Shown one piece after another: positions 36,423-60,161 of a stretch of DNA of 64,000 bases (its first letter is position 1; each line of letters starts with the position of its first letter). The stretch covers positions 1 to 64,000 of the IMG/VR virus record IMGVR_UViG_3300028666_000022; one strand, 5' to 3'. The notes under the pieces are model-generated. The model ran no database searches. It saw only the letters and a list, made by a program, of their open reading frames with translations, and had not been told where the DNA came from. The position numbers and the translations under genes are program-made.

Positions 36423-38390
36423 AACAAAATGATAATAATTGCAAACATAAGATATGCTGATGAACCAAGCGAATTGATTCCATTAACTAAAATGAATATT
36501 AAATTTGTTAAAAGATATGGCGATACAAAAATAGGTTATTATTCTCTTAATTATAATGATGTTAATAATTTTGGATATGCTTCATTAGGTAAAGAATTAC
36601 CCGAAAGTTATTTCTTAAATAAGAAAGTAAAATATATTAATTCAAAATACATTAAATAAGTGTTAAATAATTTGGAATACATAAACTTTTGTTATATCTT
36701 TGATAGCATAAACCAATAAACAAATAAGATTATGAAAACTAAAGTAAATAATACCAGAAAAGAAATTACCTACAACAAAATAGTTAATTTTGAAAACAAT
36801 GAAATTACTGTCTTAGATGGTGTATTCAATTATGGTGACATACATAATGAAGGTAAAGTTTTTAAGGGTGCAACGGGTTCAAAATTTGAGGTTGTTTCAA
36901 AAAAACAGTATTGTAATACAATGCAAAAAAAGAACGTAATTGATAAATTGGAGGATCTTGAAATTCCTGAACATTTTGGCAAGGGTAAAAGTGCTTTAAA
37001 TAAATGTTATTTAGCAATGAAAGTAAATAATGAGATTGAAGATTTTATGTTTGATCTTAGTTATTTTGAATTGTGGGATTATTTAAGAGAAGAACTTAAT
37101 TTAAGTTTAGATCAGGCATATATTTTTAATTGTATTGGTGGTGGTCGTTGTTTTGAAAAAGATTTTCAGGGCAATATTAACCCTGAATTATCAGAAGTAA
37201 TAAGAGAATACGAAAGCTAATAATTAATGTACTTTTTGCCCTGCTCTGAAATAAAAGCAGGGTTTAGTTAGTAGAAACCAAAAGATATGATGTTATGAAA
37301 AATATTATAATTGATAACTACCTAAAAGCTAAATCAGTGTTTAATAAGGCTGATGAAGATTTACACAAATATTTCAAAAAGAAACATGAGAAAAGTATTA
37401 ATGATGCAACCTCATTAGAAGAACTTAATCAAATAAAAGAACAATTGAGAATTATGCCAGAGAGTGTGGGAAAAGTTCTTTTGTTTAGAGAAATTATAAT
37501 TAAAGAAGAAAATATTAAACAATCTTTGTAACAAACAATGTCCAATGTACGTATAGTATATATAAATCAATAAACAAATAATGTCATGAGCTATAGAATA
37601 ACTAAAAAAGATATTGAAAGACAAGTTAATATTTTAGCTGAACTTTCAAATACAAAGAAAACCGAAGATTGTAAGCAATACCTTGCTATTGATTATGCAC
37701 CTGTTTATGGTGGTTATCGTTTGGTAATGGTAGGAAGTGAAAACGGTGCACATTACGGTGCATTTAATCAATCTTCATGCTGTAGTAGAATGAGTGCAAA
37801 AGAATTTAGTTTTTATCTTAGTGGTTTAATTTCTGGTATTGAATCAGTAAAGAAAAATAGTGTTATAGGAAATTTATAATTAAGTTTCCTTCTTAAACAT
37901 TTTATTTTTATTATACATTTTTAAACCAAAACAATTATGAACCAGTCAATAAAATACTTTGAAGTCTTTAGAAGTAAATTTGATAAGAAAAATAATATTG
38001 CTTCTATCAATACTATTGCTATTTTCACAGATACTTTTAAAAGAATTAGTGATAACTATACACAATGTTCATTTAAAAATTATGGGTATGAGTGCTTAAT
38101 GCCAATGGCTATGAAAAAATATGTAGCTATTAAGGCAGTAACAGCACAATTCATAAATGATTGTTGTAAAGAGATAACAGTTGATAAGGTAGATCAAATA
38201 TTAATACAGGAAGTTAACAAAAGATAAAACGATCAATGTACATATTAATAACTGAGATTATGAAAATATAAATATTAATTTTTCATAAGGGATTTTTTAT
38301 AATTTTTTATAAAAAAGATTCTAAAGAAATAGAAAAGAGAAAAAAGTTTTGTGTGTAAGCCCCCAAAAAGTAATAATATTTACAAATAAT

Positions 38391-38492
38391 ATGAAAAACA
38401 AAGAACTAAGATCAAAACTAAATTTAGAACTAAATTCAGAACTATATTCAGAACTAAGATCAGAACTAGATTCAGAACTAACTTCAATATAA
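38391..38492 (+). CDS. SELx-repeat micro-protein (33 aa)
   Basis: MKNKELRSKLNLELNSELYSELRSELDSELTSI*, built from 12-nt TCAGAACTANNN units. Confidence 0.6.
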   Translation: MKNKELRSKLNLELNSELYSELRSELDSELTSI

Positions 38493-38669
38493 GAATTAAT
38501 AAATTATCCCATACTACCAACAATATTTAATATTAATTATTGTTACAAACTCAGTATTAATGCTATTTATTGAAAGGTTCATTAACAGTATGTTTTACAT
38601 ATTTTTATATAGTTAAAGTACAATTAAAACATAATTAACTTGGTTAAAATCAAATTTAGAAAAAGCATT

Positions 38670-38855
38670 ATGAAAAACAAAGAACTATATTCAGAACTAA
38701 ATTCAGAACTATATTCAGAACTAAGATCAGAACTAGATTCAGAACTATATTCAGAACTAAATTTAGAACTAAGATCAAAACTATATTCAGAACTATATTC
38801 AGAACTAAATTCAGAACTAGATTCAGAACTAAATTCAGAACTATCTTCAATATAA
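38670..38855 (+). CDS. SELx-repeat micro-protein (61 aa); 12-nt tandem repeat
   Basis: MKNKELY(SELx)n..SSI*. Shares its start (ATGAAAAACAAAGAACTA) and 3' flank (CTTCAATATAAGAATTAATAAATTA) with 38391-38492. Confidence 0.7.
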   Translation: MKNKELYSELNSELYSELRSELDSELYSELNLELRSKLYSELYSELNSELDSELNSELSSI

Positions 38856-48700: not shown

Positions 48701-51272
48701 CTAAAATTTATTCTCGTATACTATAACATAAACCAATAAAAACAAAGGTCATGATAAAGCTAGAAATTTCAAAAGATAAGAAAGAACTTAAGATTGTTCT
48801 ATTAAATAAAGAAGAATTTATTGAAAAATATGGAAATGACAATCCATATCCTGAAATTTGGGATCTATTAGAAGATAGCGGTTATTTAGGTAATGGATAT
48901 TTTGATCTTACAGATCAGGTTGGGTTAACATCTTCTCCAATTATTGGTTACGATATTGACATAGATGATAAAGGAAATTTTGTTGAAGGCGATGTATATT
49001 GGTATCCAGATTATCAAGTAATTAATCCCTTTAGAATTTTATTAGAACAAGGTAAAGTTGTATTTGTAAATTCAGAAAATTAAATTATTATGAATAATAT
49101 ACCTTTTACACCTAATCAACAAATAATCTGGTGTTCAAGTTTTGGTTATGAGATTGGCTATTTTCTTAAAGAAGATCCTAATCAATATTATAAATATGTT
49201 GTTGATTTAGTTACTGGAGTAGTAATTGGTGAAGGTAGTTTTTCTCGATCTGAAATAAAACCATATTCAGAAGAATTAATTAATGAGTTAGCTAATGATT
49301 ATGGCTATATAAAGAAATTTTAAGAAAAATAATTAATAATATGAAAAAATTTGATTTAATATTACCTGAAGATCCAGCTCCAATAAAAATTGGTTCTAAG
49401 GTTGTGTTTATTGATGGAAGTTTTACATTGTCCATCAATAAAGATTCATTTGAATTAACACATGATTCAGTTGGTTTATCCGAAGAAATTTATACTGTTA
49501 TTGCAGTTAATGTTCCATGTCCAACTAAGGAAAGTACAATTGATTGTTTGAATACTCTTAACAATTGTATAGTAAAATCAGATGATGGTGACATTGTTTT
49601 TTGTTCTGAAATAAACATAATGAATATTAGAAAAATTGGTAAATACGAACCACCATTTAATTCAATTTTACCAATTAAACATATATGAAAACAAACAATA
49701 ACATAAAAATTCAATTAGATAATACATTCTTTTATATTGAATCTAAAGAAGAAACATTCAAATGTTTACACCAACATGAATTTAAAGATTGTATTAATAT
49801 ACTCTTAACAAATAAGCAATACGAAGATTATATTTGTGAAGATATAAGAAAATTTGATGTTAATCAAAAGAAATTAGAAAAAATAAAAGAATATCTATCA
49901 GATAATATTTGGAGAAAAAATAAGTAATATTGTAACAAATTATGTTTTATTTCGTATATTATTGAAATAATCAATAAATAATTAATATTATGAAAAACAA
50001 TAACAATTTACAGGTTGCATTAAATGATTATATTAATGATTTGGCTCAAATAAATAATACAATTGATCTTGATGCAGTAGCTAAAGGAGCAATTGAATTT
50101 GCTAACTCTAATGCAGTTAGAGAATATCACACGCAAGAAGATTTCAAGACAATGTACGATGCATTAGAATATCAATTAACTACAATTAAGAATTTGATTG
50201 CATCTAAGCCTGTGAGAGATCTGGATGAAACAATATTGTACAGTGAAAAACTTTTGGAAAAATATAAGAAATAAAATTATGAAAAAAATAATAGCAATAG
50301 TAGGTTTATTAATGATGTTTTTATTAATTTTAGGTTATGTATTGTATGATATGTTCATTGAACCAATTATTACATTGTATAATAAATTTGGATTTAATGG
50401 CATAATAATATTTATTATCATGTGGATTGTTATTATAGTAATATATTACCTTATTTTTAAATTCATTAATTGGGCAATTGATAATGCATAATATTCAAAC
50501 CACAGTATTTCTCGAAAATTATTTTCATAATATAGGATTTAATGATATTTCTTTTGATGATAATTTGGATATTGAAACCAATAATGAATTAAATCATTTT
50601 CTTTATATTGGTTTGACATTTGAACTTGCTTTTGATTTTGATGTTGCAATACAACTTGATTTATGATAAACAAAGAAAATTTTGTTACGGATAATTCTAT
50701 TTTGCATAACCTTGATTTTGATTTGAAAATTCAAATTAATAATGACCTAGCATTAAATATTTCATCGCTTAAACGAAATGAATTAATAGAATTACATAAT
50801 GTTTTAATTCATGAACTTTTTTATTCCGAATAAAATATTATGATTTATGATAAACGAAACGATGCAAGAAAATTTATGTCAAAAATATTTATATAATTTT
50901 GATAATGTCCTAATTTTAGATTTAAACAATATTTTGTGTGATTATACATATAGTAAGTTAAATAATTTATTAATTGATAACATCAATATAGAATTAAGTG
51001 AATTTAATGTGGAATTAAATCCAGTTTTTAAAGAATTTAAGTAATGAAATATGAAAAATAATGTATTAGGTTCAGACGATGAATTAGAAGAGAAATTAAA
51101 TTATTCAATAGCCATGCCACTTGATGTATGGTTAAAAAATAGTATTTTCGATGAATTGGATGATGATGAATTTTTTATAAATTTTAATGATGAAATTGAA
51201 ATAATATTAAAATAATTTTACATATATTTGCAACAACAAAAAATTTAATAATAACTTTAAACTTTTAAAAAA

Positions 51273-52304
51273 ATGAAAACATTAGAAGATTTAACGCCCG
51301 AAATTAAGGCAAAAATTCCTATGTACAAAGAAAGATGTACTAAAGATCTATATTCCGGCGTGGAATATGATAATTTTAATCCTGAACAAAGTACTGCTTA
51401 TGTAGATAAGTTGTATGAGATATGTGGATTTGAAAAACCAGTTGTAATCTTTGCTGATGATCCAAATGATTACAAAAAGAAGTTAAAAGAACTTGAAAAA
51501 GGTAAGAAACTTCAGAAGGTATATGAACAGTATCTTAAGAAGAATAACTTGGAAAACGATGGTACAGTATTCGAAAATTGCAAATATGAGAATAAGTCTC
51601 ATTGGCTTTTCTTGTGTTCATCTTATCATAGAGTGTACCTAATGTGGTACAAGTTTATTCAAGATGAATTTCAAATAGATCATAAGAATAAAGATATTCT
51701 TAATTGGTTGTATGAAAATGCCAATAACAATATCGCTCGTTGTTTCTTTACAAAGATGTTTGTTCTTGTTCTTAGAATGCCTAAATACATTCATAGAAAT
51801 GCAATAGGTTTCCACAGTATAGATGGTGGTGCAATACATTGGCCTAATTATAATATGTATTACATTAATGGTCGTAGAATACCTGAAGATTTGTTCTTAA
51901 AAACAATCAATAAGGAACTTACTTTCGATGAGTTTATTAAGTTAACTGATGAAAATGTTAAGGGTTCATTGATAACTCTTATGAAAGAAAAGTTCGGAAA
52001 TGAATACTTAATGGCATTTCTTAATGCCAAAGTAATTGATGAACAAACTATTAATCATAGTAGTGGTTATAGTGAAGTAGTTAAACTTTGGCACACCAAT
52101 GAGAAATTTAGTTTTCTTGTTGATATTAACGGTGTTGAAAATCAACCTTATTCTTGGTTGGAACTTCATTGCCCCTCAACTGGTTCGATGTTTTTAATTG
52201 ATACCAGTGCTCACTTTGATAATGCAATAGAAGCTTGTAAGTATCATAGACCTCAACAAATTCCTGCTGAATTGAAATATGATTTCAATGAGTTTAACAA
52301 CTAA
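51273..52304 (+). CDS. DUF6745-like protein lacking the usual internal tetrapeptide repeat
   Basis: LTPEIKAKIP.Y.E N-terminus, FEKPVVIFADDP, WYKFI, GFHSIDGGAIHWPNYNMYYINGRRIP, CPSTG..FLI; own TATATTTG promoter at 51223. Family assignment is from recalled motifs. Confidence 0.7.
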   Translation: MKTLEDLTPEIKAKIPMYKERCTKDLYSGVEYDNFNPEQSTAYVDKLYEICGFEKPVVIFADDPNDYKKKLKELEKGKKLQKVYEQYLKKNNLENDGTVFENCKYENKSHWLFLCSSYHRVYLMWYKFIQDEFQIDHKNKDILNWLYENANNNIARCFFTKMFVLVLRMPKYIHRNAIGFHSIDGGAIHWPNYNMYYINGRRIPEDLFLKTINKELTFDEFIKLTDENVKGSLITLMKEKFGNEYLMAFLNAKVIDEQTINHSSGYSEVVKLWHTNEKFSFLVDINGVENQPYSWLELHCPSTGSMFLIDTSAHFDNAIEACKYHRPQQIPAELKYDFNEFNN

Positions 52305-52316
52305 AAAGGTGTTTGA

Positions 52317-52362
52317 AAATAAGGAATTGGATAATGATCTTAAGTTATCCAATTCCTTATTT
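52317..52362 (+). terminator. 18-bp perfect hairpin after the DUF6745-like gene
   Basis: AAATAAGGAATTGGATAA-N10-TTATCCAATTCCTTATTT, overlapping the micro-ORF at 52309. Confidence 0.65.
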
Positions 52363-54598
52363 GATAATTTAAGACTAATGGATGATTTTAATATGTTGAA
52401 TTATGAAGAGCATATTGAATTGGGTAGTGAATTATGTTCCGATATATAATTTCAATGAATTTAACAACTAAAATGAAATTTGAGAATATAGAACTGGATT
52501 ATACTCTTCTGGAATTATCCTCCAGTTCTATGCTCATTGATTTAACTGATACATTTTCTTCAGATTTAGAATTTAGATTATTAACTAAAACAATTATAAT
52601 GTCAAACAGTGAAGAGTTTGTTGAATTAGCCGATAATTTATTTAATGAATTAAAATAATATTATTATGTTTGATAATAAAGAAATAGATAACAGTTTATT
52701 TATTAATATGTTTTCATTTGAAAATGAATTAAGATATAATAAAATATCTAATGATTTAGATAATGTAATAAAAGAATTTGTTTTAAATAGTTTAAGAATT
52801 GAAATGTCTGTTGTATTAGGTTTAGTGTTTTATCTTGAAATAATTAATAATTAAATTCATAATATGAAAAATAATGAAATTGCTAATGAACTAGATATTC
52901 CAATATCTAATATAATCTCTCTAAAGATATGTAAAGAAAACAATAGATTTAGTGCCAATATATCATACAGCAAAATATTTGATTTAATGAATGATGAAAT
53001 ATTTATAGATTTACGTAATGCAATTTATTCTAATATAAGACATGAATAATAAATGAAAAATAATATACTAATAGAAAATGAATTTATTGCTCTAAATAAC
53101 ATGGGTGATAATTTTATTAATGATTTAATAAGTGGATTAAATTTTCATGATGCATTAACTGAGCTACGGTTAATGATAAGAGTTAATGATTTAGAAGAAA
53201 TATTTTTTAAAGATTTTGATTTTTTTAATTAAAAATATAATATAAATAATGAAATTTCAGAATATTGAAATTGTTGATATGTTTTTTAAAAAATCAAATA
53301 TGTTCTTTCAAGATTTAAAATACTCAATTTTAGATCTTAAGTTAGATGGAGAATTATTTGATAAAATTATATTTGAGGGAGATACAACATTATTGAACGA
53401 AATTGCTAATGATTTAGAAGATGAATTAAAATGATTACTGAAACTAAGAACGATATTGAATTAAGAAAAATAAAACTATTGATTGAATCATTATATAATG
53501 ATTTATATATTAATATTCATATTGATTTAATGTTTAAAACCACCGATGAATTATTTGATGGATCATTAGGTGGATTAGAAAATGATATTGATAATGAATT
53601 AAAACAATGAATAATAGTGATATTGCATTAGATTATATGTTATCAAAAAATAATTTTATTTTTAATAATGATTTTAATGTTAAATTAGATATGACACTAC
53701 AACATCAATTAATAAATCAACTTAGAATTAGATTATTTAGTGATTTATTAAATGAAGTTTACGATGAAACAGAAATAATAACCATATGAAAAATTATGAA
53801 ATAAGTAAAATATTATCTTTTAAATTAGAATTTATTTCTGATATAACAGATAGATTTAATTATCATACTCATAAAAATATATATTTAGATTCTCTTGAAT
53901 TAATTGAACTTTTATTAGATGATTTAAATAGTGAGTTACAATTAGATTTAAAATAATAGAATGAAAAATGTTACTCTTGAAGATTTGGATGAAAAAATAA
54001 TATTTCTTGATAATGATTTCGGATTATTTATGATTGAAATTTGCTCATATGGTTTAAATGATTATTTATATAGAGAATTTAATGAACTATTTGCAGATTT
54101 ATTTATAGAGATTAATAACGAAATTCAAATAAATAATTAAATTCATATTATGAAAAATATTGAAATTGCAAACCGAAGGCAAAATATTAAAGCAATTATT
54201 AATTTGGAAGATAAATTACACGATTTTTTATATTCTTTCTTTAATGAAAATGATGAAATAAATATTGATTTACTCAATGAATTAGATCCAATCTTAAAAA
54301 ATAATTTACGAGAAGAGTTATTTAGTTTAAATATTGAAATCTTTATAATAATATAATATTGATTATGAAAAACATTGAAATGCTTTTAGATTTAGAGTTA
54401 AAATTAGATCCTAATTCAGGTACTATATTATTTTTAGAATTAAGATCAGCAGTAAATTCAAAATTATTTAATTTATTCCCTTTTACAGAACAAGAATTAA
54501 TACTATATTTAGATATTGATATTTAATTAAAATTTTTCTTGCGTATTTAAAAATAATAGTATATATTTGCTACATAAAAACAATTTAAAATTAAAAGT

Positions 54599-54970
54599 AT
54601 GAAAATTCTAAAACAAGTAGGTCATCAAGGTGACACACAATGGTTTGCAATAGATGCAGTACCAGAAAATGCTAAGTTGTGTAAGAAACAATTTATTGCA
54701 GCAAGTGAAAAATCAGGCAACGTACATGCTCTTAGTGGAAATTACGATATGTACGAGTATGAGGACGGATTCGTAATTGATGTGAAAGATGATTGCGCAA
54801 TGCTTAATCATACAGCAATATCAGAACTTAACGAAAAAACTTGGAATAATCCTCAAGTACTTCCTCCACGTGATCATAGAAGTTCTGAGATTAAGAAGGG
54901 TGTTTATTTTGTAGGCATTCAAAGAAGGTTTAATCCTTTGAGTAAGCTTATGGAGAAAGTTAAGGATTAA
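54599..54970 (+). CDS. QGD/His-motif beta-rich protein, recalled as the usual DUF6745 partner
   Basis: HQGD, ASEKSGNVHAL, LNH..DH, GVYFVGIQRRF..KVKD; own TATATTTG promoter at 54562. Confidence 0.65.
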   Translation: MKILKQVGHQGDTQWFAIDAVPENAKLCKKQFIAASEKSGNVHALSGNYDMYEYEDGFVIDVKDDCAMLNHTAISELNEKTWNNPQVLPPRDHRSSEIKKGVYFVGIQRRFNPLSKLMEKVKD

Positions 54971-57175
54971 GAATAACAAAAATTAAAAATTTAAAAGCTA
55001 TAATGGTAATTATATCATAATTATTGTTATGGCTTTTGTTATTAAAAATGTAGGTATGAAATTTGAAAACTATATAGCAATTGATCAATTAGATAATATT
55101 TTATTTGATTATTTTAAAATATCGAAAGAAACCACATATAGTTTAGATAGATTTATTAATACTGAATTATTAATGGAGCTAAGAAATGAATTAGAAGATC
55201 AATTAGAAATTGAAACATATGAAAAATATTGTATTATTTGAAGAATTAAATTCTAAGCTTATTATTGATGATGAATTAACTACATTAAATAATAAACTAA
55301 AATTTAATTTAAAACAAGCAATTAACCATCAAATTTTTGATGAATCATATTATTCATTAAGAAAAGAAATTATTAATGAATAAGAATAACATGAAAAATA
55401 CTATATTAAATAATAATTTGGATTATTCTTTAGATGGAGAATTACCAACAATATTAGTTGAAAATATTCACAATATATTAATGTTCGATGTTTTAATTAT
55501 TGATTTAGATATATTATTTTAATATGAAAAATATTGAAGCAGGAAATGTTATTACAGAAAATTCAATTTTTATTAATTTAATATTAATATCTTCTGATTT
55601 ATATAATACTTCGTGGAATGAACTAGATATAAAATTAATTAAATCAACTAGTTCTGATGATGAATTTAGAGGTGATCACATGAAAGAATTAAATGATGAA
55701 ATATCAGAAGAATTATAATAATATGAAAAATACAATATCTGTTGATGCATTAGATTATGTATTAACAAAAAAATATTTTGATGATATTTTATCTCAAAAA
55801 TTATCAATAAAATTATTTGGAGAAATTAATGAAAAATTATATGTTGAATTATTTACTGAACTAAATTTGGGTTTAGATCCAACAATTGGTTCAATTTTAG
55901 AAATATGATTATTGTAACAAAATGCATTTATTATTCGTATATCAAAAGATAAAAATATAAAACTATGAAAAATATTGAAATGGATCGGTGTGACATCATA
56001 GGAATTGAATTTCTATTAATGTCAACATTAAAAAATAATATATTTATTAATAGTAAGAATGCTTTATATTATGAAACAAAAAAAATTTTTATTTCTAACT
56101 TTAATGAAGATTTGGATATTATTCTTCGTGATGAATTACATAATAATCTGTAACAAAATCATTCTTTTATTCGTATTATAAACCAAATTTAAAACACAAA
56201 TTTTATGAAAAAACAAGGCATTTATATTGAGAAACATTCAAAAACACAAACCAAGAAGTTATATAATAATGGTTATCTCACAATAAGATATTTGTTTCAG
56301 CCACATTCAATTAATTTCAAAAATGAAATGATTAATGATGACAATCAACATTTTTGTGGTGGATATAGTGTTAATAATATGGATTTATCTAACGATGCAC
56401 TTCTTAATCGAGTATTAGTCGGTAAGAAACCAATGGGTGTTATTTATGAAAGAGATGATGAAAAATTATATAATTATTTTAAAAATATTGACATAACTAA
56501 ATTTTTTGTTGAAGTATGTAAAAATACAATAACAAATTATAATTATATCATTGTTGCTTACAAAGGTAATTTTGATGATCTTTTTGATTTAGAAACATTA
56601 AAATCTGATTACAAAAATAGTGGAATTGATATAGATTTAAATGAAGTCAAAGGAAAAACACTCAAAGATTTTTTTGAAACTTGGGATGACAATCTTTGGA
56701 TTACTGGATTAATGTTAGGATATCCAATTGAAAATACTATTTCAATTTATAAAGATGGTGTGAGATGAAAACATTAAAAGTTAAATTTAAATATAGGTTA
56801 TTGGGACAATATTTTCCAATGATAACACAAGAATTAGTTAATGTTGAAAGTGATTCTAATGAAGAAGAAATGCAACAACAAATTAATTTTGCATATAAGG
56901 AATTTATTAAATATATTGGTAATAATGTTGTTGAAATATATCCATACGAAATTCTTTAAAATAAAAATTATCATGAGAAACTACGATAGGGATTGGTTTG
57001 AAAAATATGATGAACCGGGAAATAAAATTCTCAATCTAATTGGATTTGATGAAAATGATATTGAAATTTGTCATGAATATTTATGTGACAAAGATGATTG
57101 TAATTGTTCTGGACATTGGAAGGTTGGTAATGATAAAAATGTTCACACTTGGATTGGTCGACCTGTTTAAAAATA

Positions 57176-57233: not shown

Positions 57234-57512
57234 GTTTTATGTAACAAATTTATTTATTTTTCGTATAATTTATTTTTAACTAACAAAACTAAAATTATAC
57301 GATATGTTAATCACTAAACTAGATTTAATCGAAGGCATAATAAACATGACCTTTGCTGATTCAATACCTAAGAGAAAGTATAATAAAATGATATTGAGAC
57401 TTTCAAAAGAAAGTAATTTTCTTTTAGCTGAGTCATATTATAAATCGACTGGTAAAAGATTAAGGCCAATCATGCATGACATTTTTATTGATGAATGATT
57501 TTTTATTATGTT

Positions 57513-57541
57513 TGTAACAAACCAAATTATTTTTCGTATAT
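57513..57541 (+). promoter_or_regulatory. Representative ECF-type promoter TGTAAC-N16/17-CGTAT
   Basis: TGTAACAAACCAAATTATTTTTCGTATAT, identical at 58391; more than 20 copies in the window. Confidence 0.8.
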
Positions 57542-60161
57542 TTGTTTAATCAAAACAATATTATCATGAAAAAATTACAAAAAATAATAACAATAGATAC
57601 AGATAAAACATACCCAGAAACTTGTCTAATAAAGAAAGGTGATAAATATCATTATTGTTTAGCTGGTGGTGAGTTTAGAAGATTAGTTGCAAATGGTTGG
57701 CAACCTCAAGAATTAATATTAATATCTAATGAAGAAATAAAAGAAGGTGATTTAGTATTATATGAAATGAATAGTATTGAATATGCAACTATTGATTATA
57801 TTGAAGCAAATTCTTATAATGGTAAAATAATTGCAGCATATCCTCAAATTGAAAATCTTCCTTTATTTTCAAAGGAATTTCTTCAAGAATGGTGCAATAA
57901 TCCAGTTGAAAAGATTGGAGTACAATATGATGAGATAAGTACCAAAGTAAATAGAAATGGATTGTTAATTAGGTATATATTAAATTTAACATCAAATAAT
58001 GAAGTAATTTGTAATCTACCTCAAGATTTTAAAAGTGTTAAACTTCTTAAAGAATATTTAGAAGAAACGCCAAAAGAAGAATTAACTAAACATTGGAATG
58101 ATATTAATAAAACAAGATTATATAGTGAAGACGATTTACTTTCTTTAGCTAATTATATTAGTGATAGTAACACTTTTCATTATACCATTAAATCATTAGT
58201 TGAAAACTGGAAAAATCAAAAATGAATATATCAATAAATGATTCAAACAATAATTTCTTTAGAATTTTTGAGATTAAATTTTAAAATATTCTTTGGAATA
58301 ACTTAGACAATAATTTAATTTATTTAGATAATGATGAAAATGTTGATGTTGAAATTGCTATTTCAAGGGAATTAGAATTTTAAAGTATTTTGTAACAAAC
58401 CAAATTATTTTTCGTATATTATATCATAAAACAATTAAAAATTAAATATTATGCAATTTACTGTTACAACCATTAGGCTAAACTCTAACACAAAAGAGTT
58501 TCAGAACACAGAAACAAATAATTTCTTGTTGTGTGAAGAAGTAGTAAAAGAACTAGAACGTATCAATTGTGATGATGAACAATTTGAAAAGTTCTTTTCT
58601 ATGAAAAGAGGTGAAAACATAACAATTGAAACTGTTGATGAAGATGAGAATAAATTGAGGTTTTGTTATATTTTTAGAGTTAGTTGATAAAAAGAAAAAA
58701 CACAAATAATAAAATCATGATACTTGAAAAGAAATTAACAATCGAAGAACAAAATGAGATATTAGGTAATCTTTTTGGATTCCAATTAAAGGATTACGAA
58801 AACGATGGACGTTTTATTTTGTATGATGAAGAAGGACTTGAGTTTTACGGAAAAGATTCGAATTTAAAATATGATTTTTCAACCCTTTCGGGAATATTTC
58901 ATTATGTTAATCAAATTGGCATAGAAAGAGGTGAATATAATAAACAACTAGAAATAAAAAGAGCATTGGGTTTGTAACAATTAGAATTTGTTTACGTATA
59001 ATATTGTAAATTAAACCAAAAACATTATGAAAACAACTGAAAACGAATTTAAAACCAATATTGAAACTTCGATTCAAAAAGAAATTAATGAAGCATCTCG
59101 AATTTTTGGTTATGAAAAGAAATTGATTATAAAAACAGCTAAAGAAATAGTTAAAGAAAATAATCAAGAATTAGAAGCTATTCATATTAGTTTAGCTATT
59201 ACTAAATTAGAAAAACAAAGAAGTGACATTCAATTAAAAATAAAAGAAAATATAAAACGAGTTGAGAGTATTCCTTATGAAACTCATTTAAAAAATTATG
59301 AGAATGCAATATCTGAATTAACTAAAGAAACAACTGTTGAAGGATTAAACAAATTATATTCTGAAATAGTCAATAAGCAAGAATTTATTGATATACCAGT
59401 TAATTTACAAATTGATTTAGCTGATGAAACAGATGAACTAGAACAAAAATTAATTAATCCGACAAAAGAAAGATATTATACTCTGTTTGATGAAACTGGC
59501 TACATTGTTAGAGATTCTCACGATAATAATAAAATTGTTTTCAAAGGTAAACATGTAAATGGTAATGACGCTAAGAAATGGGCCTACGAACATAATAATA
59601 AAATCGTTTAAATCATGAATAAATTATTTAAAGCAAAGAATAAGAATAATAATTTTCAGTGGGTAATTGCTGAAAATGAAGAACAAGCATATGAAATTTG
59701 CATTAAATCTAAATTTGTAAAAAATATTAATAATTATACATTATATTTAGGTGATAAAGACACTCCTAATTTTTATGAGTATTTTAAAAATAAAAAAAAT
59801 GATATGACTGAAGTAGATAATAAAATTGGTGTTGGTTGTGTTTATATTAATAATGTTTCTTCGGTTTGGAAAGTAATGTGTGTTTAAATTTTAAAAAAAT
59901 AACATGAAAGACGATAACGGTAACACAATTAAAATTAAATCATACACATTGTATTGGCTTAATGGCAAACGTCAAGTAATTAAAGGTTTTGATTTTGTTA
60001 ATGCCTTTACTTTAGCTGGTTACAAACAAAAAGATTTATCTTCGGTTGATTTTACTAAAATGGGAAACTGTAATAAATATGTTTGGAACAAGAAAATAAT
60101 TAAGTGGGAATTAACCGAAAGGGCGAGAATGTATGAACACTTCAAACAAAGTATATAAACG

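What the first reader, a model, noticed from the sequence alone, without database searches (positions are those of the whole stretch)
52282..52473. Duplicated 3' end of the DUF6745-like gene brackets the first downstream cassette
Seen: ATTTCAATGA(G/A)TTTAACAACTAAAA (25 nt, one mismatch) occurs at 52282-52306, covering the last codons and stop of the DUF6745-like gene, and again at 52449-52473. Each copy is directly followed by an FEN-type micro-ORF (VFENKELD.., MKFENIELD..). The first cassette contains an 18-bp perfect hairpin. Inference: the array grows by tandem duplication or insertion at the DUF6745-proximal end, possibly in a polarised way, and the hairpin may attenuate read-through into the array.
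Basis: partly seen in the sequence, partly recalled or inferred. Interest (0 to 1): 0.6.

Follow-up and report, generated by a model that had tools for sequence, protein, structure and literature searches.

The report
Duplicated gene tail and hairpin
In an uncultured 340-kb T4-like phage, a 167-base stretch holding the last 30 bases of a conserved gene, the hairpin behind it and the first small gene of a fast-changing array was copied in tandem; this is a real but fairly ordinary trace of how such arrays grow.

Summary
The 25-mer occurs at 52282-52306 and 52449-52473 (24/25) and nowhere else in the 339,898-bp genome. It extends to 31/36 with a sharp left edge at 52274. An independent sample's contig spans both copies without a difference, so it is not an assembly artefact.

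Copy 1 is the native 3' end of a 343-aa gene. The tail ELKYDFxxFNN* is conserved in all close relatives examined, and none of them has a second copy.

The duplicated module is the tail plus a hairpin that starts 13-17 nt after the stop. Hairpin 2 is orthologous to the hairpin at that place in relative L013. Hairpin 1 differs from it by three compensatory pairs and is the longest, most stable perfect hairpin in the genome.

The best reading is one lineage-specific unequal-recombination event that copied the gene's 3' module and the first cassette. Cassette 1 has lost its ATG and looks like a relic.

Polarised growth is not supported. Other paralogous islands are internal or dispersed, and arrays flank the gene on both sides.

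The micro-ORFs keep a 12-nt periodicity. Relatives carry pure (xxEL)n repeats at the same hot spot between two conserved genes. Terminator or attenuator function is plausible but untested.

The parts
51273..52304 (+). 343-aa conserved gene ('gp343', a distant DUF6745 relative). Its tail ELKYDFNEFNN* is native.
   Evidence: ORF. Homologues at 57-73% identity over the full length occur in 310-340-kb phage contigs, and all close ones end in ELKYDFxxFNN* or a near variant. Only distant homologues carry PF20530. The Pfam scan itself is blank.
52274..52306 (+). Repeat copy 1: the last 10 codons and stop of gp343 (core 52282-52306).
52317..52362 (+). Hairpin 1: 18 perfect bp with a 10-nt loop, starting 13 nt after the gp343 stop.
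   Evidence: At -23.2 kcal/mol it is the longest and most stable perfect hairpin in the genome. Its 5' arm GGAATTGGATAATGA equals the repeat-unit consensus of relative L003.
52309..52449 (+). Cassette c1 (46 codons from GTG), probably a relic. It has AAG where c2 has ATG. In-frame ATGs lie inside the gene tail at 52279 and 52288.
   Evidence: Its body is no closer to c2 than to other cassettes, and no other copy exists in the genome or in relatives.
52441..52473 (+). Repeat copy 2: a duplicate of the gp343 tail. It reads ..IYNFNEFNN* in the frame of a 22-codon ORF (52403-52471), and its TAA lies 1 nt before the ATG of c2.
52488..52531 (+). Hairpin 2: 11 perfect bp with a 22-nt loop, starting 17 nt after the copy-2 stop. 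It is orthologous to the hairpin behind the gene in L013.
   Evidence: It shares AATATAGAACT / AGTTCTAT with L013.
52473..52658 (+). Cassette c2 (61 aa, MKFENIELD...), probably the original first cassette.
   Evidence: The AlphaFold model shows three helices with mean pLDDT 76.
52666..54526 (+). Cassettes c3-c12: ten tightly packed 53-68-aa ORFs with an MKN head and acidic (xxEL)-type tails.
   Evidence: ATG-ORFs of 45 aa or more cover 97% of 52473-54526, against 1.8% in shuffles. The 12-nt periodicity has z = 5.0.
54599..54970 (+). 123-aa conserved gene ('gp123'), the syntenic partner of gp343 in all relatives.
50478..51215 (+). Four cassettes upstream of gp343 (u1-u4).
55029..56153 (+). Six cassettes downstream of gp123 (d1-d6).
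52841..52887 (+). Second junction repeat (c3 tail + c4 head). It matches 54127-54173 (c10 tail + c11 head) at 41/47.
   Evidence: (D8, D13).

Best explanation
The repeat is the scar of one lineage-specific unequal or illegitimate recombination event in a hyperplastic region of a T4-like jumbo phage. The partners could have been sister genomes or co-infecting strains.

The event copied in tandem, with a 167-nt period, a block holding three things: the last 30 nt of the conserved 343-aa gene, the terminator-like hairpin that sits 13-17 nt behind its stop, and the head of the first micro-ORF.

Copy 2 with cassette 2 keeps the ancestral junction: the stop, one base, then ATG, followed by the hairpin type seen in relative L013. 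The proximal unit (cassette 1) has lost the family ATG, is short, and carries the strongest hairpin of the genome 8 nt after its only possible GTG start. It probably now serves as the 3' untranslated and terminator region of the 343-aa gene rather than as a gene.

Shown: the duplication, its uniqueness to this lineage, the conserved position of the hairpin and the compensatory changes in it. Inferred: the recombination mechanism, the relic status of cassette 1, and termination or attenuation by the hairpins.

The array as a whole grows by such out-of-register duplications at many places and scales, from 12-nt units up to whole cassettes. It does not grow from one end.
For: Only two copies of the repeat exist in the genome, and chance expects none. 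The 5' edge lies sharply inside the gene at 52274.

The tail is conserved in all close relatives examined, no relative has a second copy, and copy 2 shares the codons TTC/AAC/AAC only with copy 1.

An independent contig spans both copies with no difference.

Hairpins of 10 bp or more start 13-21 nt after the stop in both window copies and in L011, L013 and L022, against a background of 0.021. Six stem columns change on both sides while keeping pairing among hairpin 1, hairpin 2 and L013.

Hairpin 1 is the longest and most stable perfect hairpin of the genome, and 13 of the 28 long hairpins lie within 60 nt after an ORF stop.

The spacer between gp343 and gp123 ranges from 8 to 2294 nt among relatives. 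It holds (xxEL)n repeats or micro-ORFs.

A second out-of-register junction repeat lies inside the array. T4-type phages recombine on patches under 50 bp, as reviewed in PMC2839356.
Against: Divergence is uneven along the unit. The tail is 28/30 and the head 24/35 (Fisher p = 0.015), while the bodies of c1 and c2 are no closer to each other than to any other cassette. A simple recent duplication of one genome's sequence predicts near-identical cassettes. So one of three things must be added: the partners were diverged strains, the event is old and copy 2 is held by selection or gene conversion, or the bodies diverge very fast.

The consensus terminator scan did not call either hairpin. Hairpin 2 has no U-rich tail. 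Both hairpins lie inside open reading frames. There are no RNA data.
Confidence: 0.68

Rival explanations
1. This was recombination between two diverged co-infecting strains, not sister genomes. Strain A supplied gp343 with its own first cassette (c1). Strain B supplied the last 30 nt of its gp343 with its own first cassette (c2) and the rest of the array. The two tails are then orthologues that protein-level selection kept alike until the event, and c1 and c2 are alleles of a hypervariable site.
For: This reading explains the near-identical tails next to unrelated cassette bodies. A co-occurring strain about 10% diverged exists in the same habitat. Its contig matches 52042-52326 and then runs on unlike the window. 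Its tail carries only synonymous changes, including 52292 G>A, which is the state of copy 2. The tail DNA stays 90% identical even to a relative at 59% protein identity (L022).
Against: Copy 2 shares only one of the four tail variants of that strain. No parental arrangement was recovered. The data cannot tell this reading from an old duplication plus constraint.
Confidence: 0.25
2. This is a PeSL-like mobile cassette. The 30-mer plus hairpin would be a linker on which small ORFs are excised as mini-circles and re-inserted, and c1 arrived that way.
For: Direct repeats bracket a single small ORF in a hyperplastic region of a T4-type phage, each repeat next to a stem-loop. That is the layout described for PeSLs (PMC2839356, PMC4122927). 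The same intergenic site holds a LAGLIDADG ORF in relative L024, so it does accept insertions.
Against: The motif has only two copies in 340 kb. The 28 long hairpins of the genome share no sequence. No promoter-like hexamer pair lies within the repeated 68 nt. No donor copy of c1 exists in the genome or in the relatives. No contig joins 52306 to 52473.
Confidence: 0.08
3. The second copy is kept by selection as a working cis element for cassette 2. One possibility is a termination-reinitiation site: the 22-codon ORF 52403-52471 stops 1 nt before the ATG of c2. Another is that it encodes an N-terminal extension of c2 (MNLTTK... from ATG 52455).
For: The tail is better conserved than the adjacent head. 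The stop-A-ATG junction of copy 2 mirrors the tight coupling of gp343 to its first micro-ORF in the closest relative, where the two genes overlap by 1 nt. Both in-frame extensions are open.
Against: No other cassette junction uses this sequence. The family consensus start is MK(N/F), which equals ATG 52473. The variant strain destroys the equivalent ATG 52279 in copy 1. With only 30 nt, 2 differences is a weak clock.
Confidence: 0.15
4. The match is a chance or convergent similarity, because cassette tails (..FNELK*) resemble the gene tail (..FNEFNN*); or it is an assembly artefact.
For: The cassette C-terminus TTT AAT GAA TTA AAA TAA does resemble TTC AAT GAG TTT AAC AAC TAA (read).
Against: The match is 24/25 identical, includes three rare C-ending codons, and continues in a different frame from cassette 1. 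None of 100 shuffles gave a match. An independent contig from another sample spans both copies.
Confidence: 0.02

Closest known systems
PeSL (promoter-early stem-loop) cassettes in hyperplastic regions of T4-type phages (Arbiol et al. 2010, PMC2839356; Comeau et al. 2014, PMC4122927)
   Same: The phage is T4-type, with a Gp23 capsid. The region is rich in ORFans with no family hits. A small ORF is bracketed by short direct repeats, each next to a stem-loop. Recombination between the repeats would delete or duplicate the ORF.
   Different: The repeat is a piece of a conserved gene's coding end, not an intergenic promoter-terminator unit. It has two copies, not dozens. No promoter lies within it. 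The hairpins lie inside ORFs, and hairpins elsewhere in the genome share no sequence with them.
Tandem segmental duplication by unequal or illegitimate recombination, as in gene 'accordions' of poxviruses and duplications in T4 and lambda (from general knowledge, not tested here)
   Same: The copies lie head to tail with a fixed 167-nt period. The unit is out of register with gene borders, so a gene fragment is carried along. The event is lineage-specific.
   Different: The copies are not uniformly diverged. There is no evidence of dosage selection or of copy-number variation among the four samples examined.
Intrinsic terminator or 3' stabilising hairpin behind a gene
   Same: The position is 13 nt after the stop. 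The stem has A-rich 5' and U-rich 3' flanks. The position is conserved, with unrelated stems, in L011 and L022, and pairing is kept by compensatory changes.
   Different: The U tract is broken (UUAUUUGAUAAUUU). The consensus scan did not call it. It overlaps an ORF. Activity is untested.
Coding minisatellites and repeat-protein genes that expand by slippage
   Same: Relatives carry 12/24/48/132-nt tandem repeats encoding (xxEL)n at the same site. The window's micro-ORFs keep a 12-nt periodicity.
   Different: In the window the repeats are broken into separate ORFs of about 60 codons, each with its own MKN start. They have diverged so far that Tandem Repeats Finder sees nothing.

Membership tests
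PeSL regulatory cassettes (T4-type phages) | A conserved composite motif of about 100 bp repeated many times across hyperplastic regions | tested here: not met
   The genome holds only 2 copies at up to 2 mismatches. A genome-wide scan for local direct repeats finds no further copy. The 28 long hairpins share no sequence.
PeSL regulatory cassettes (T4-type phages) | Contains a strong sigma-70-like early promoter | tested here: not met
   No promoter-like hexamer pair lies within 52274-52341 or 52441-52508. The nearest on the + strand starts at 52572.
PeSL regulatory cassettes (T4-type phages) | Contains a stem-loop that terminates transcription | tested here: inconclusive
   Strong stem-loops are present beside both copies. 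Termination is untested, and the consensus scan was negative.
PeSL regulatory cassettes (T4-type phages) | Copies flank ORFans, and recombination between them yields deletions or mini-circles | not testable with these tools
   The layout fits, since c1 is bracketed. The public runs are kept only as contigs, and none joins 52306 to 52473. Rare forms would not be seen this way.
Simple tandem duplication | Adjacent head-to-tail copies with one period, carrying a fragment of the flanking unique gene that relatives have only once | tested here: met
   The period is 167 nt. The edge lies inside the gene at 52274. All relatives have a single tail.
Simple tandem duplication | Even divergence along the two units | tested here: not met
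   The tail is 28/30 and the head 24/35 (p = 0.015). The bodies are at family background.
Intrinsic terminator | A stable stem followed directly by a U tract | tested here: inconclusive
   The core stem has 13 bp at -16.5 kcal/mol and is followed by TTATTTGATAATTT. The consensus scan did not report it. Hairpin 2 has no T-rich tail.
Intrinsic terminator | Lies just behind a stop codon, and the position is conserved in orthologous loci | tested here: met
   The hairpins start 13 and 17 nt after the stop in the window, and 13, 21 and 13 nt after it in L013, L011 and L022. The background for a stem of 10 bp or more is 0.021.
DUF6745 (PF20530) | Match to the Pfam model at its gathering score | tested here: not met
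   No hit at E up to 10 by hmmscan or by a six-frame family search of the genome.
DUF6745 (PF20530) | Significant sequence homology to proteins that carry the domain | tested here: met
   P0088, P0089, P0092, P0093 and P0094 (E 1e-16 to 1e-33, 29-33% identity) are annotated with PF20530.
   Three of the four high-identity islands are internal or dispersed. The best protein pairs are c6-d1, c8-d5 and u1-c11. Cassettes lie on both sides of the gene, as they do in L008 and L021.

The most novel reading that the evidence does not exclude
The micro-ORF arrays of about 60 aa in this clade of 310-340-kb T4-like phages may be a gene nursery. A 12-nt coding repeat, (xxEL)n, would expand at hot spots such as the spacer between gp343 and gp123. 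It would acquire an MKN start, be cut into ORFs of about 60 codons, and diverge into dozens of helical acidic micro-proteins.

The duplicated gene tail would then be one caught-in-the-act scar of that process. The hairpins built from a repeat unit and its inverted copy would be recruited as terminators.
Probability: 0.4. Interest if true: 0.6.

Novelty: new variant of a known kind. Interest (0 to 1): 0.4.

Why it matters
This is a dated-by-context footprint of how ORFan arrays in large phages change. A duplication out of register with gene borders dragged a conserved gene's end and its 3' hairpin into the array.

Together with the relatives, it marks the spacer between two conserved genes as a hot spot. 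There the same (xxEL) repeat appears as a pure minisatellite, as a 509-aa repeat ORF, or as a dozen separate micro-ORFs. That series could make the birth and turnover of small phage genes testable.

The duplication itself is an expected kind of event, and the functions of the cassettes remain unknown.

Tried and rejected
- **DNA search of 5.8 kb of the array and of the capsid locus against 50,697 phage records:** no match.
- **Pattern scan of viral contigs for the tail motif:** one unrelated chance hit, L007.
- **Pfam and PHROGs on cassettes, repeat ORFs and neighbouring ORFs:** nothing above cut-off.
- **Rfam:** only sub-threshold generic hairpin matches.
- **ESM Atlas on cassette 2:** low recognition, no lead.
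- **Paper searches:** the search for DUF6745 found nothing, and the search for phage tandem arrays returned only unrelated papers.
- **Closest relative (P0002, 73% identity):** a four-micro-ORF array starts at the gene's stop, but no DNA is held.
- **MAFFT alignment of the three hairpins:** it misaligned the 3' arms, so pairs were tabulated by script instead.
- **Idea that the gene tail was captured from a cassette C-terminus (FNELK*):** rejected, because the tail is conserved in relatives that have no array next to it.
- **Transposon or MITE with a target-site duplication:** rejected. There are no terminal inverted repeats, and 30 nt is too long for a target-site duplication.
- **Bacteroidota host inferred from TAnnTTTG-like motifs:** dropped. 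The motif count is at chance, and relatives show a TGTAAC-N17-CGTATAAT type instead.
Full report
**Setting.** The window is the first 64 kb of a 339,898-bp virus record with direct terminal repeats. It has 22-27% G+C and came from rhizosphere metagenomes; nine runs from nine studies hold the stretch. The phage encodes a Gp23-type major capsid protein. Its best cultured matches are only 40-43% identical: Microcystis phage Mel-JY01 and Flavobacterium phage immuto. It is therefore a deep-branching T4-like jumbo phage. The region from 36 to 64 kb is rich in ORFans, and none of nine larger ORFs has a Pfam family.

**The observation.** The 25-mer is at the stated coordinates with one mismatch, at 52292 G / 52459 A.
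- Shuffles give no match, and the whole genome has just these two copies.
- In the +167 register the similarity starts abruptly at 52274; blocks upstream match 1-4 per 10 nt.
- It runs 31/36 to 52309 and continues at lower identity to 52341, 79% over 68 nt.
- Copy 1 is the end of a 343-aa ORF, 51273-52304.
- The heads VFENKELD (GTG 52309) and MKFENIELD (ATG 52473) follow the two copies. In strict register, cassette 1 has AAG where cassette 2 has ATG.
- The hairpin is real: 18 perfect pairs, 52317-52334 with 52345-52362.
- A contig from a different sample and study spans 51723-52616 without a single difference (X3 record 11). The copies share exact words of only 10 and 14 nt, so an assembler could not have made the repeat.

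**Which copy is the original.** I took homologues of the 343-aa protein from viral contigs, metagenomes and the protein collection: 57-73% identity over the full length, on 310-340-kb contigs. All close ones end in ELKYDFxxFNN* or a near variant. The tail is therefore native to the gene and was not borrowed from a cassette. None of the relatives has a second copy downstream. Copy 2 shares with copy 1 the C-ending codons TTC, AAC and AAC, a combination no relative uses. It was therefore copied from this lineage's own gene or from a very close strain.

The Pfam scan of the protein is blank. Distant homologues at E 1e-16 to 1e-33 carry PF20530, so 'DUF6745-like' is fair as a remote relationship.

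**The locus in relatives.** The 343-aa gene and the 123-aa gene (54599-54970) are a conserved pair. The spacer between them varies widely:

| Locus | Spacer between the two genes | Content |
|---|---|---|
| L021 | 8 nt | none |
| L022, L014, L004 | 113-135 nt | non-coding |
| L013 | 437 nt | (xxEL)n repeats |
| L016 | 617 nt | (xxEL)n repeats |
| L024 | about 1.3 kb | LAGLIDADG ORF |
| L003 | 1564 nt | one 509-aa (SELDNELF)n ORF |
| L011 | 1772 nt | micro-ORFs of about 60 aa |
| window | 2294 nt | micro-ORFs of about 60 aa |

- L003, L013 and L016 carry 12-nt-period repeats encoding (xxEL)n at this site. L008, whose contig ends before any gp123, has the same kind of repeat directly downstream of the gene. 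In L003 the repeats form one 509-aa ORF with 24-, 48- and 132-nt higher-order units.
- L011, the closest relative P0002 and the window carry tightly packed micro-ORFs of about 60 aa.
- In the window, ATG-ORFs of 45 aa or more cover 97% of 52473-54526 on the + strand, against 1.8% in shuffles and 0% on the - strand. They are therefore maintained reading frames.
- They keep a 12-nt periodicity. Identity at lags 12, 24 and 36 is 0.39, 0.39 and 0.38, against 0.33-0.35 at other multiples of 3. This gives z = 5.0 and 4.1 against codon shuffles. The same signal is present in L011 and L021.
- The same genome also holds 'young' forms at 38349-38855: an MKNKEL head followed by pure (xSEL)n.

The cassettes and the repeats are therefore one evolving family. 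An HMM of the cassettes finds further weak members elsewhere in the genome. A model of cassette 2 is three helices with pLDDT 76. No library names them.

**What was duplicated.** The two cassette bodies are no closer to each other than to other cassettes: protein z is 3.8 for c1-c2 against 4.1 for c1-u4, and DNA scores fall within the family range. What c1 and c2 specifically share is the tail (28/30), the head (24/35) and a hairpin at the same place.

- Hairpin 2 (52488-52531, 11 bp) shares AATATAGAACT and AGTTCTAT with the 16-bp hairpin that starts 13 nt after the stop in L013. It is the ancestral element behind this gene.
- Hairpin 1 differs from hairpin 2 at three stem positions, each changed on both sides (A-T/T-A, G-C/A-T, T-A/C-G). 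L013 differs at three more, again keeping pairs.
- Perfect stems of 10 bp or more starting 13-21 nt after the stop also occur in L011 and L022 with unrelated sequence. Only 2.1% of random 90-nt windows of this genome have such a stem.
- Hairpin 1 is the longest and most stable (-23.2 kcal/mol) of the 28 perfect hairpins of 12 bp or more in the genome. Thirteen of those 28 sit within 60 nt after an ORF stop.
- Its 5' arm, GGAATTGGATAATGA, is the consensus repeat unit of L003, and its 3' arm is the inverted copy.

The duplicated module is thus the gene's 3' end: tail, short spacer and hairpin.

**Mechanism.** I read this as one unequal or illegitimate recombination event that produced a 167-nt tandem unit. 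T4-type phages recombine on patches under 50 bp (PMC2839356).
- Copy 2 keeps the ancestral tight junction (TAA, one base, ATG). This resembles the 1-nt overlap between the gene and its first micro-ORF in the closest relative.
- Cassette 1 lost that ATG, is the shortest cassette, and has an 18-bp stem starting 8 nt after its GTG. I take it for a relic that now forms the 3' region of the 343-aa gene.
- The uneven divergence (Fisher p = 0.015 for tail vs head) is not explained by a recent same-genome duplication.
  - One alternative is that the partners were diverged strains. A strain about 10% diverged, with a different sequence after 52326 and only synonymous tail changes, co-occurs in run X4.
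  - The other is that the event is old and copy 2 is held by conversion or by a role in starting cassette 2. The 22-codon ORF 52403-52471 ends 1 nt before that ATG.
  - I cannot separate these.

**Polarity.** Only four islands of 22/25 or better exist in 50400-56200, against about 0.25 per shuffle. The other three are c3-tail/c4-head vs c10-tail/c11-head (41/47), c4 vs c11 bodies, and c8 vs d5 heads across the 123-aa gene. The first has the same kind of out-of-register junction as the finding, but it lies inside the array. Cassettes lie on both sides of the 343-aa gene here, and also in L008 and L021. Growth from one end is therefore not supported.

**Comparison with known systems.** The nearest described system is the PeSL cassette of T4-type phages (PMC2839356, PMC4122927). 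In it, short conserved promoter-terminator units flank ORFans and mediate their gain, loss and excision as mini-circles.
- The layout here is alike: direct repeats with stem-loops bracket one small ORF in a hyperplastic region.
- Two defining features fail. The motif is not a multi-copy family, and it holds no promoter.
- It works like a PeSL pair could, but it is not one. Rfam has nothing.

**Limits.**
- No RNA data exist for this phage, so termination is inferred only.
- The public runs are kept as contigs, so rare deletion or circle forms are invisible.
- The big protein search was used once, because the family scans left the 343-aa protein open.

Noticed in passing
window 38349-38492 and 38640-38855: Two micro-ORFs consist of an MKNKEL head followed by pure (xSEL)n 12-nt repeats. 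Blocks of 59/60 identity lie 267 nt apart. They look like young members of the same family as the diverged cassettes at 50-56 kb.
   Followed up: partly
window 50478-56153; L011 2068-3299; L021 199-5869: The micro-ORF arrays keep a 12-nt (4-residue) periodicity (z = 5 in the window). This links them to the (xxEL)n tandem repeats that fill the same spacer in L003, L013 and L016 and follow the gene in L008.
   Followed up: yes
L024 7188-8057; L021 7071-7080; L004 7069-7203: The spacer between the two conserved genes is an insertion hot spot. It is 8 nt in L021 and about 130 nt in L004 and L014, and in L024 it holds a 289-aa ORF with a faint LAGLIDADG hit.
   Followed up: partly
window 52841-52887 vs 54127-54173; 52990-53014 vs 54249-54273; 53624-53650 vs 55746-55772: There are three further short islands of 87-89% identity between otherwise diverged cassettes. 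One of them spans an ORF tail, a spacer and the next ORF head, like the finding.
   Followed up: partly
window 52042-52326 (run X4, record 18): A co-occurring strain about 10% diverged matches the gene end and then runs on unlike the window for 125 nt. Its tail changes (52280, 52283, 52286, 52292) are all synonymous for the 343-aa gene.
   Followed up: partly
window 53962-54162 (run X2): One contig joins 53962 to 54162, skipping 199 nt, roughly cassette c10. Only 30 nt lie on the shorter side, so it may be a variant lacking c10 or a mis-lay.
   Followed up: no
window 57510-57543 and 58388-58421; L011, L014, L021, L022 upstream of the gp343 homologue: A promoter-like motif, TTTGTAAC - about 17 nt - CGTATATTT / CGTATAAT, recurs before genes. 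In the window, the 343-aa and 123-aa genes instead both have TATATTTGC about 40 nt before their ATG (51223, 54562), a count that is not above chance.
   Followed up: partly
window 52403-52471: A 22-codon ORF in another frame of cassette 1 ends with the copied tail (..IYNFNEFNN*), 1 nt before the ATG of cassette 2. This could be a termination-reinitiation arrangement.
   Followed up: no
L021 1-5869: This relative has 32 called micro-ORFs of 30-69 aa directly upstream of the gene: 21 on the + strand, then 11 on the - strand.
   Followed up: partly
G000 156-157.5 kb, 212.4-213.4 kb, 334-335 kb (outside the window): Other dense families of local direct repeats with periods of 126-800 nt, apparently inside repeat-containing genes.
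   Followed up: no
L022 3280-4410; L024 2366-2668: ORFs with Cas12f1-like TNB (TnpB-type) Pfam hits lie a few kb upstream of the gene in two relatives.
   Followed up: no
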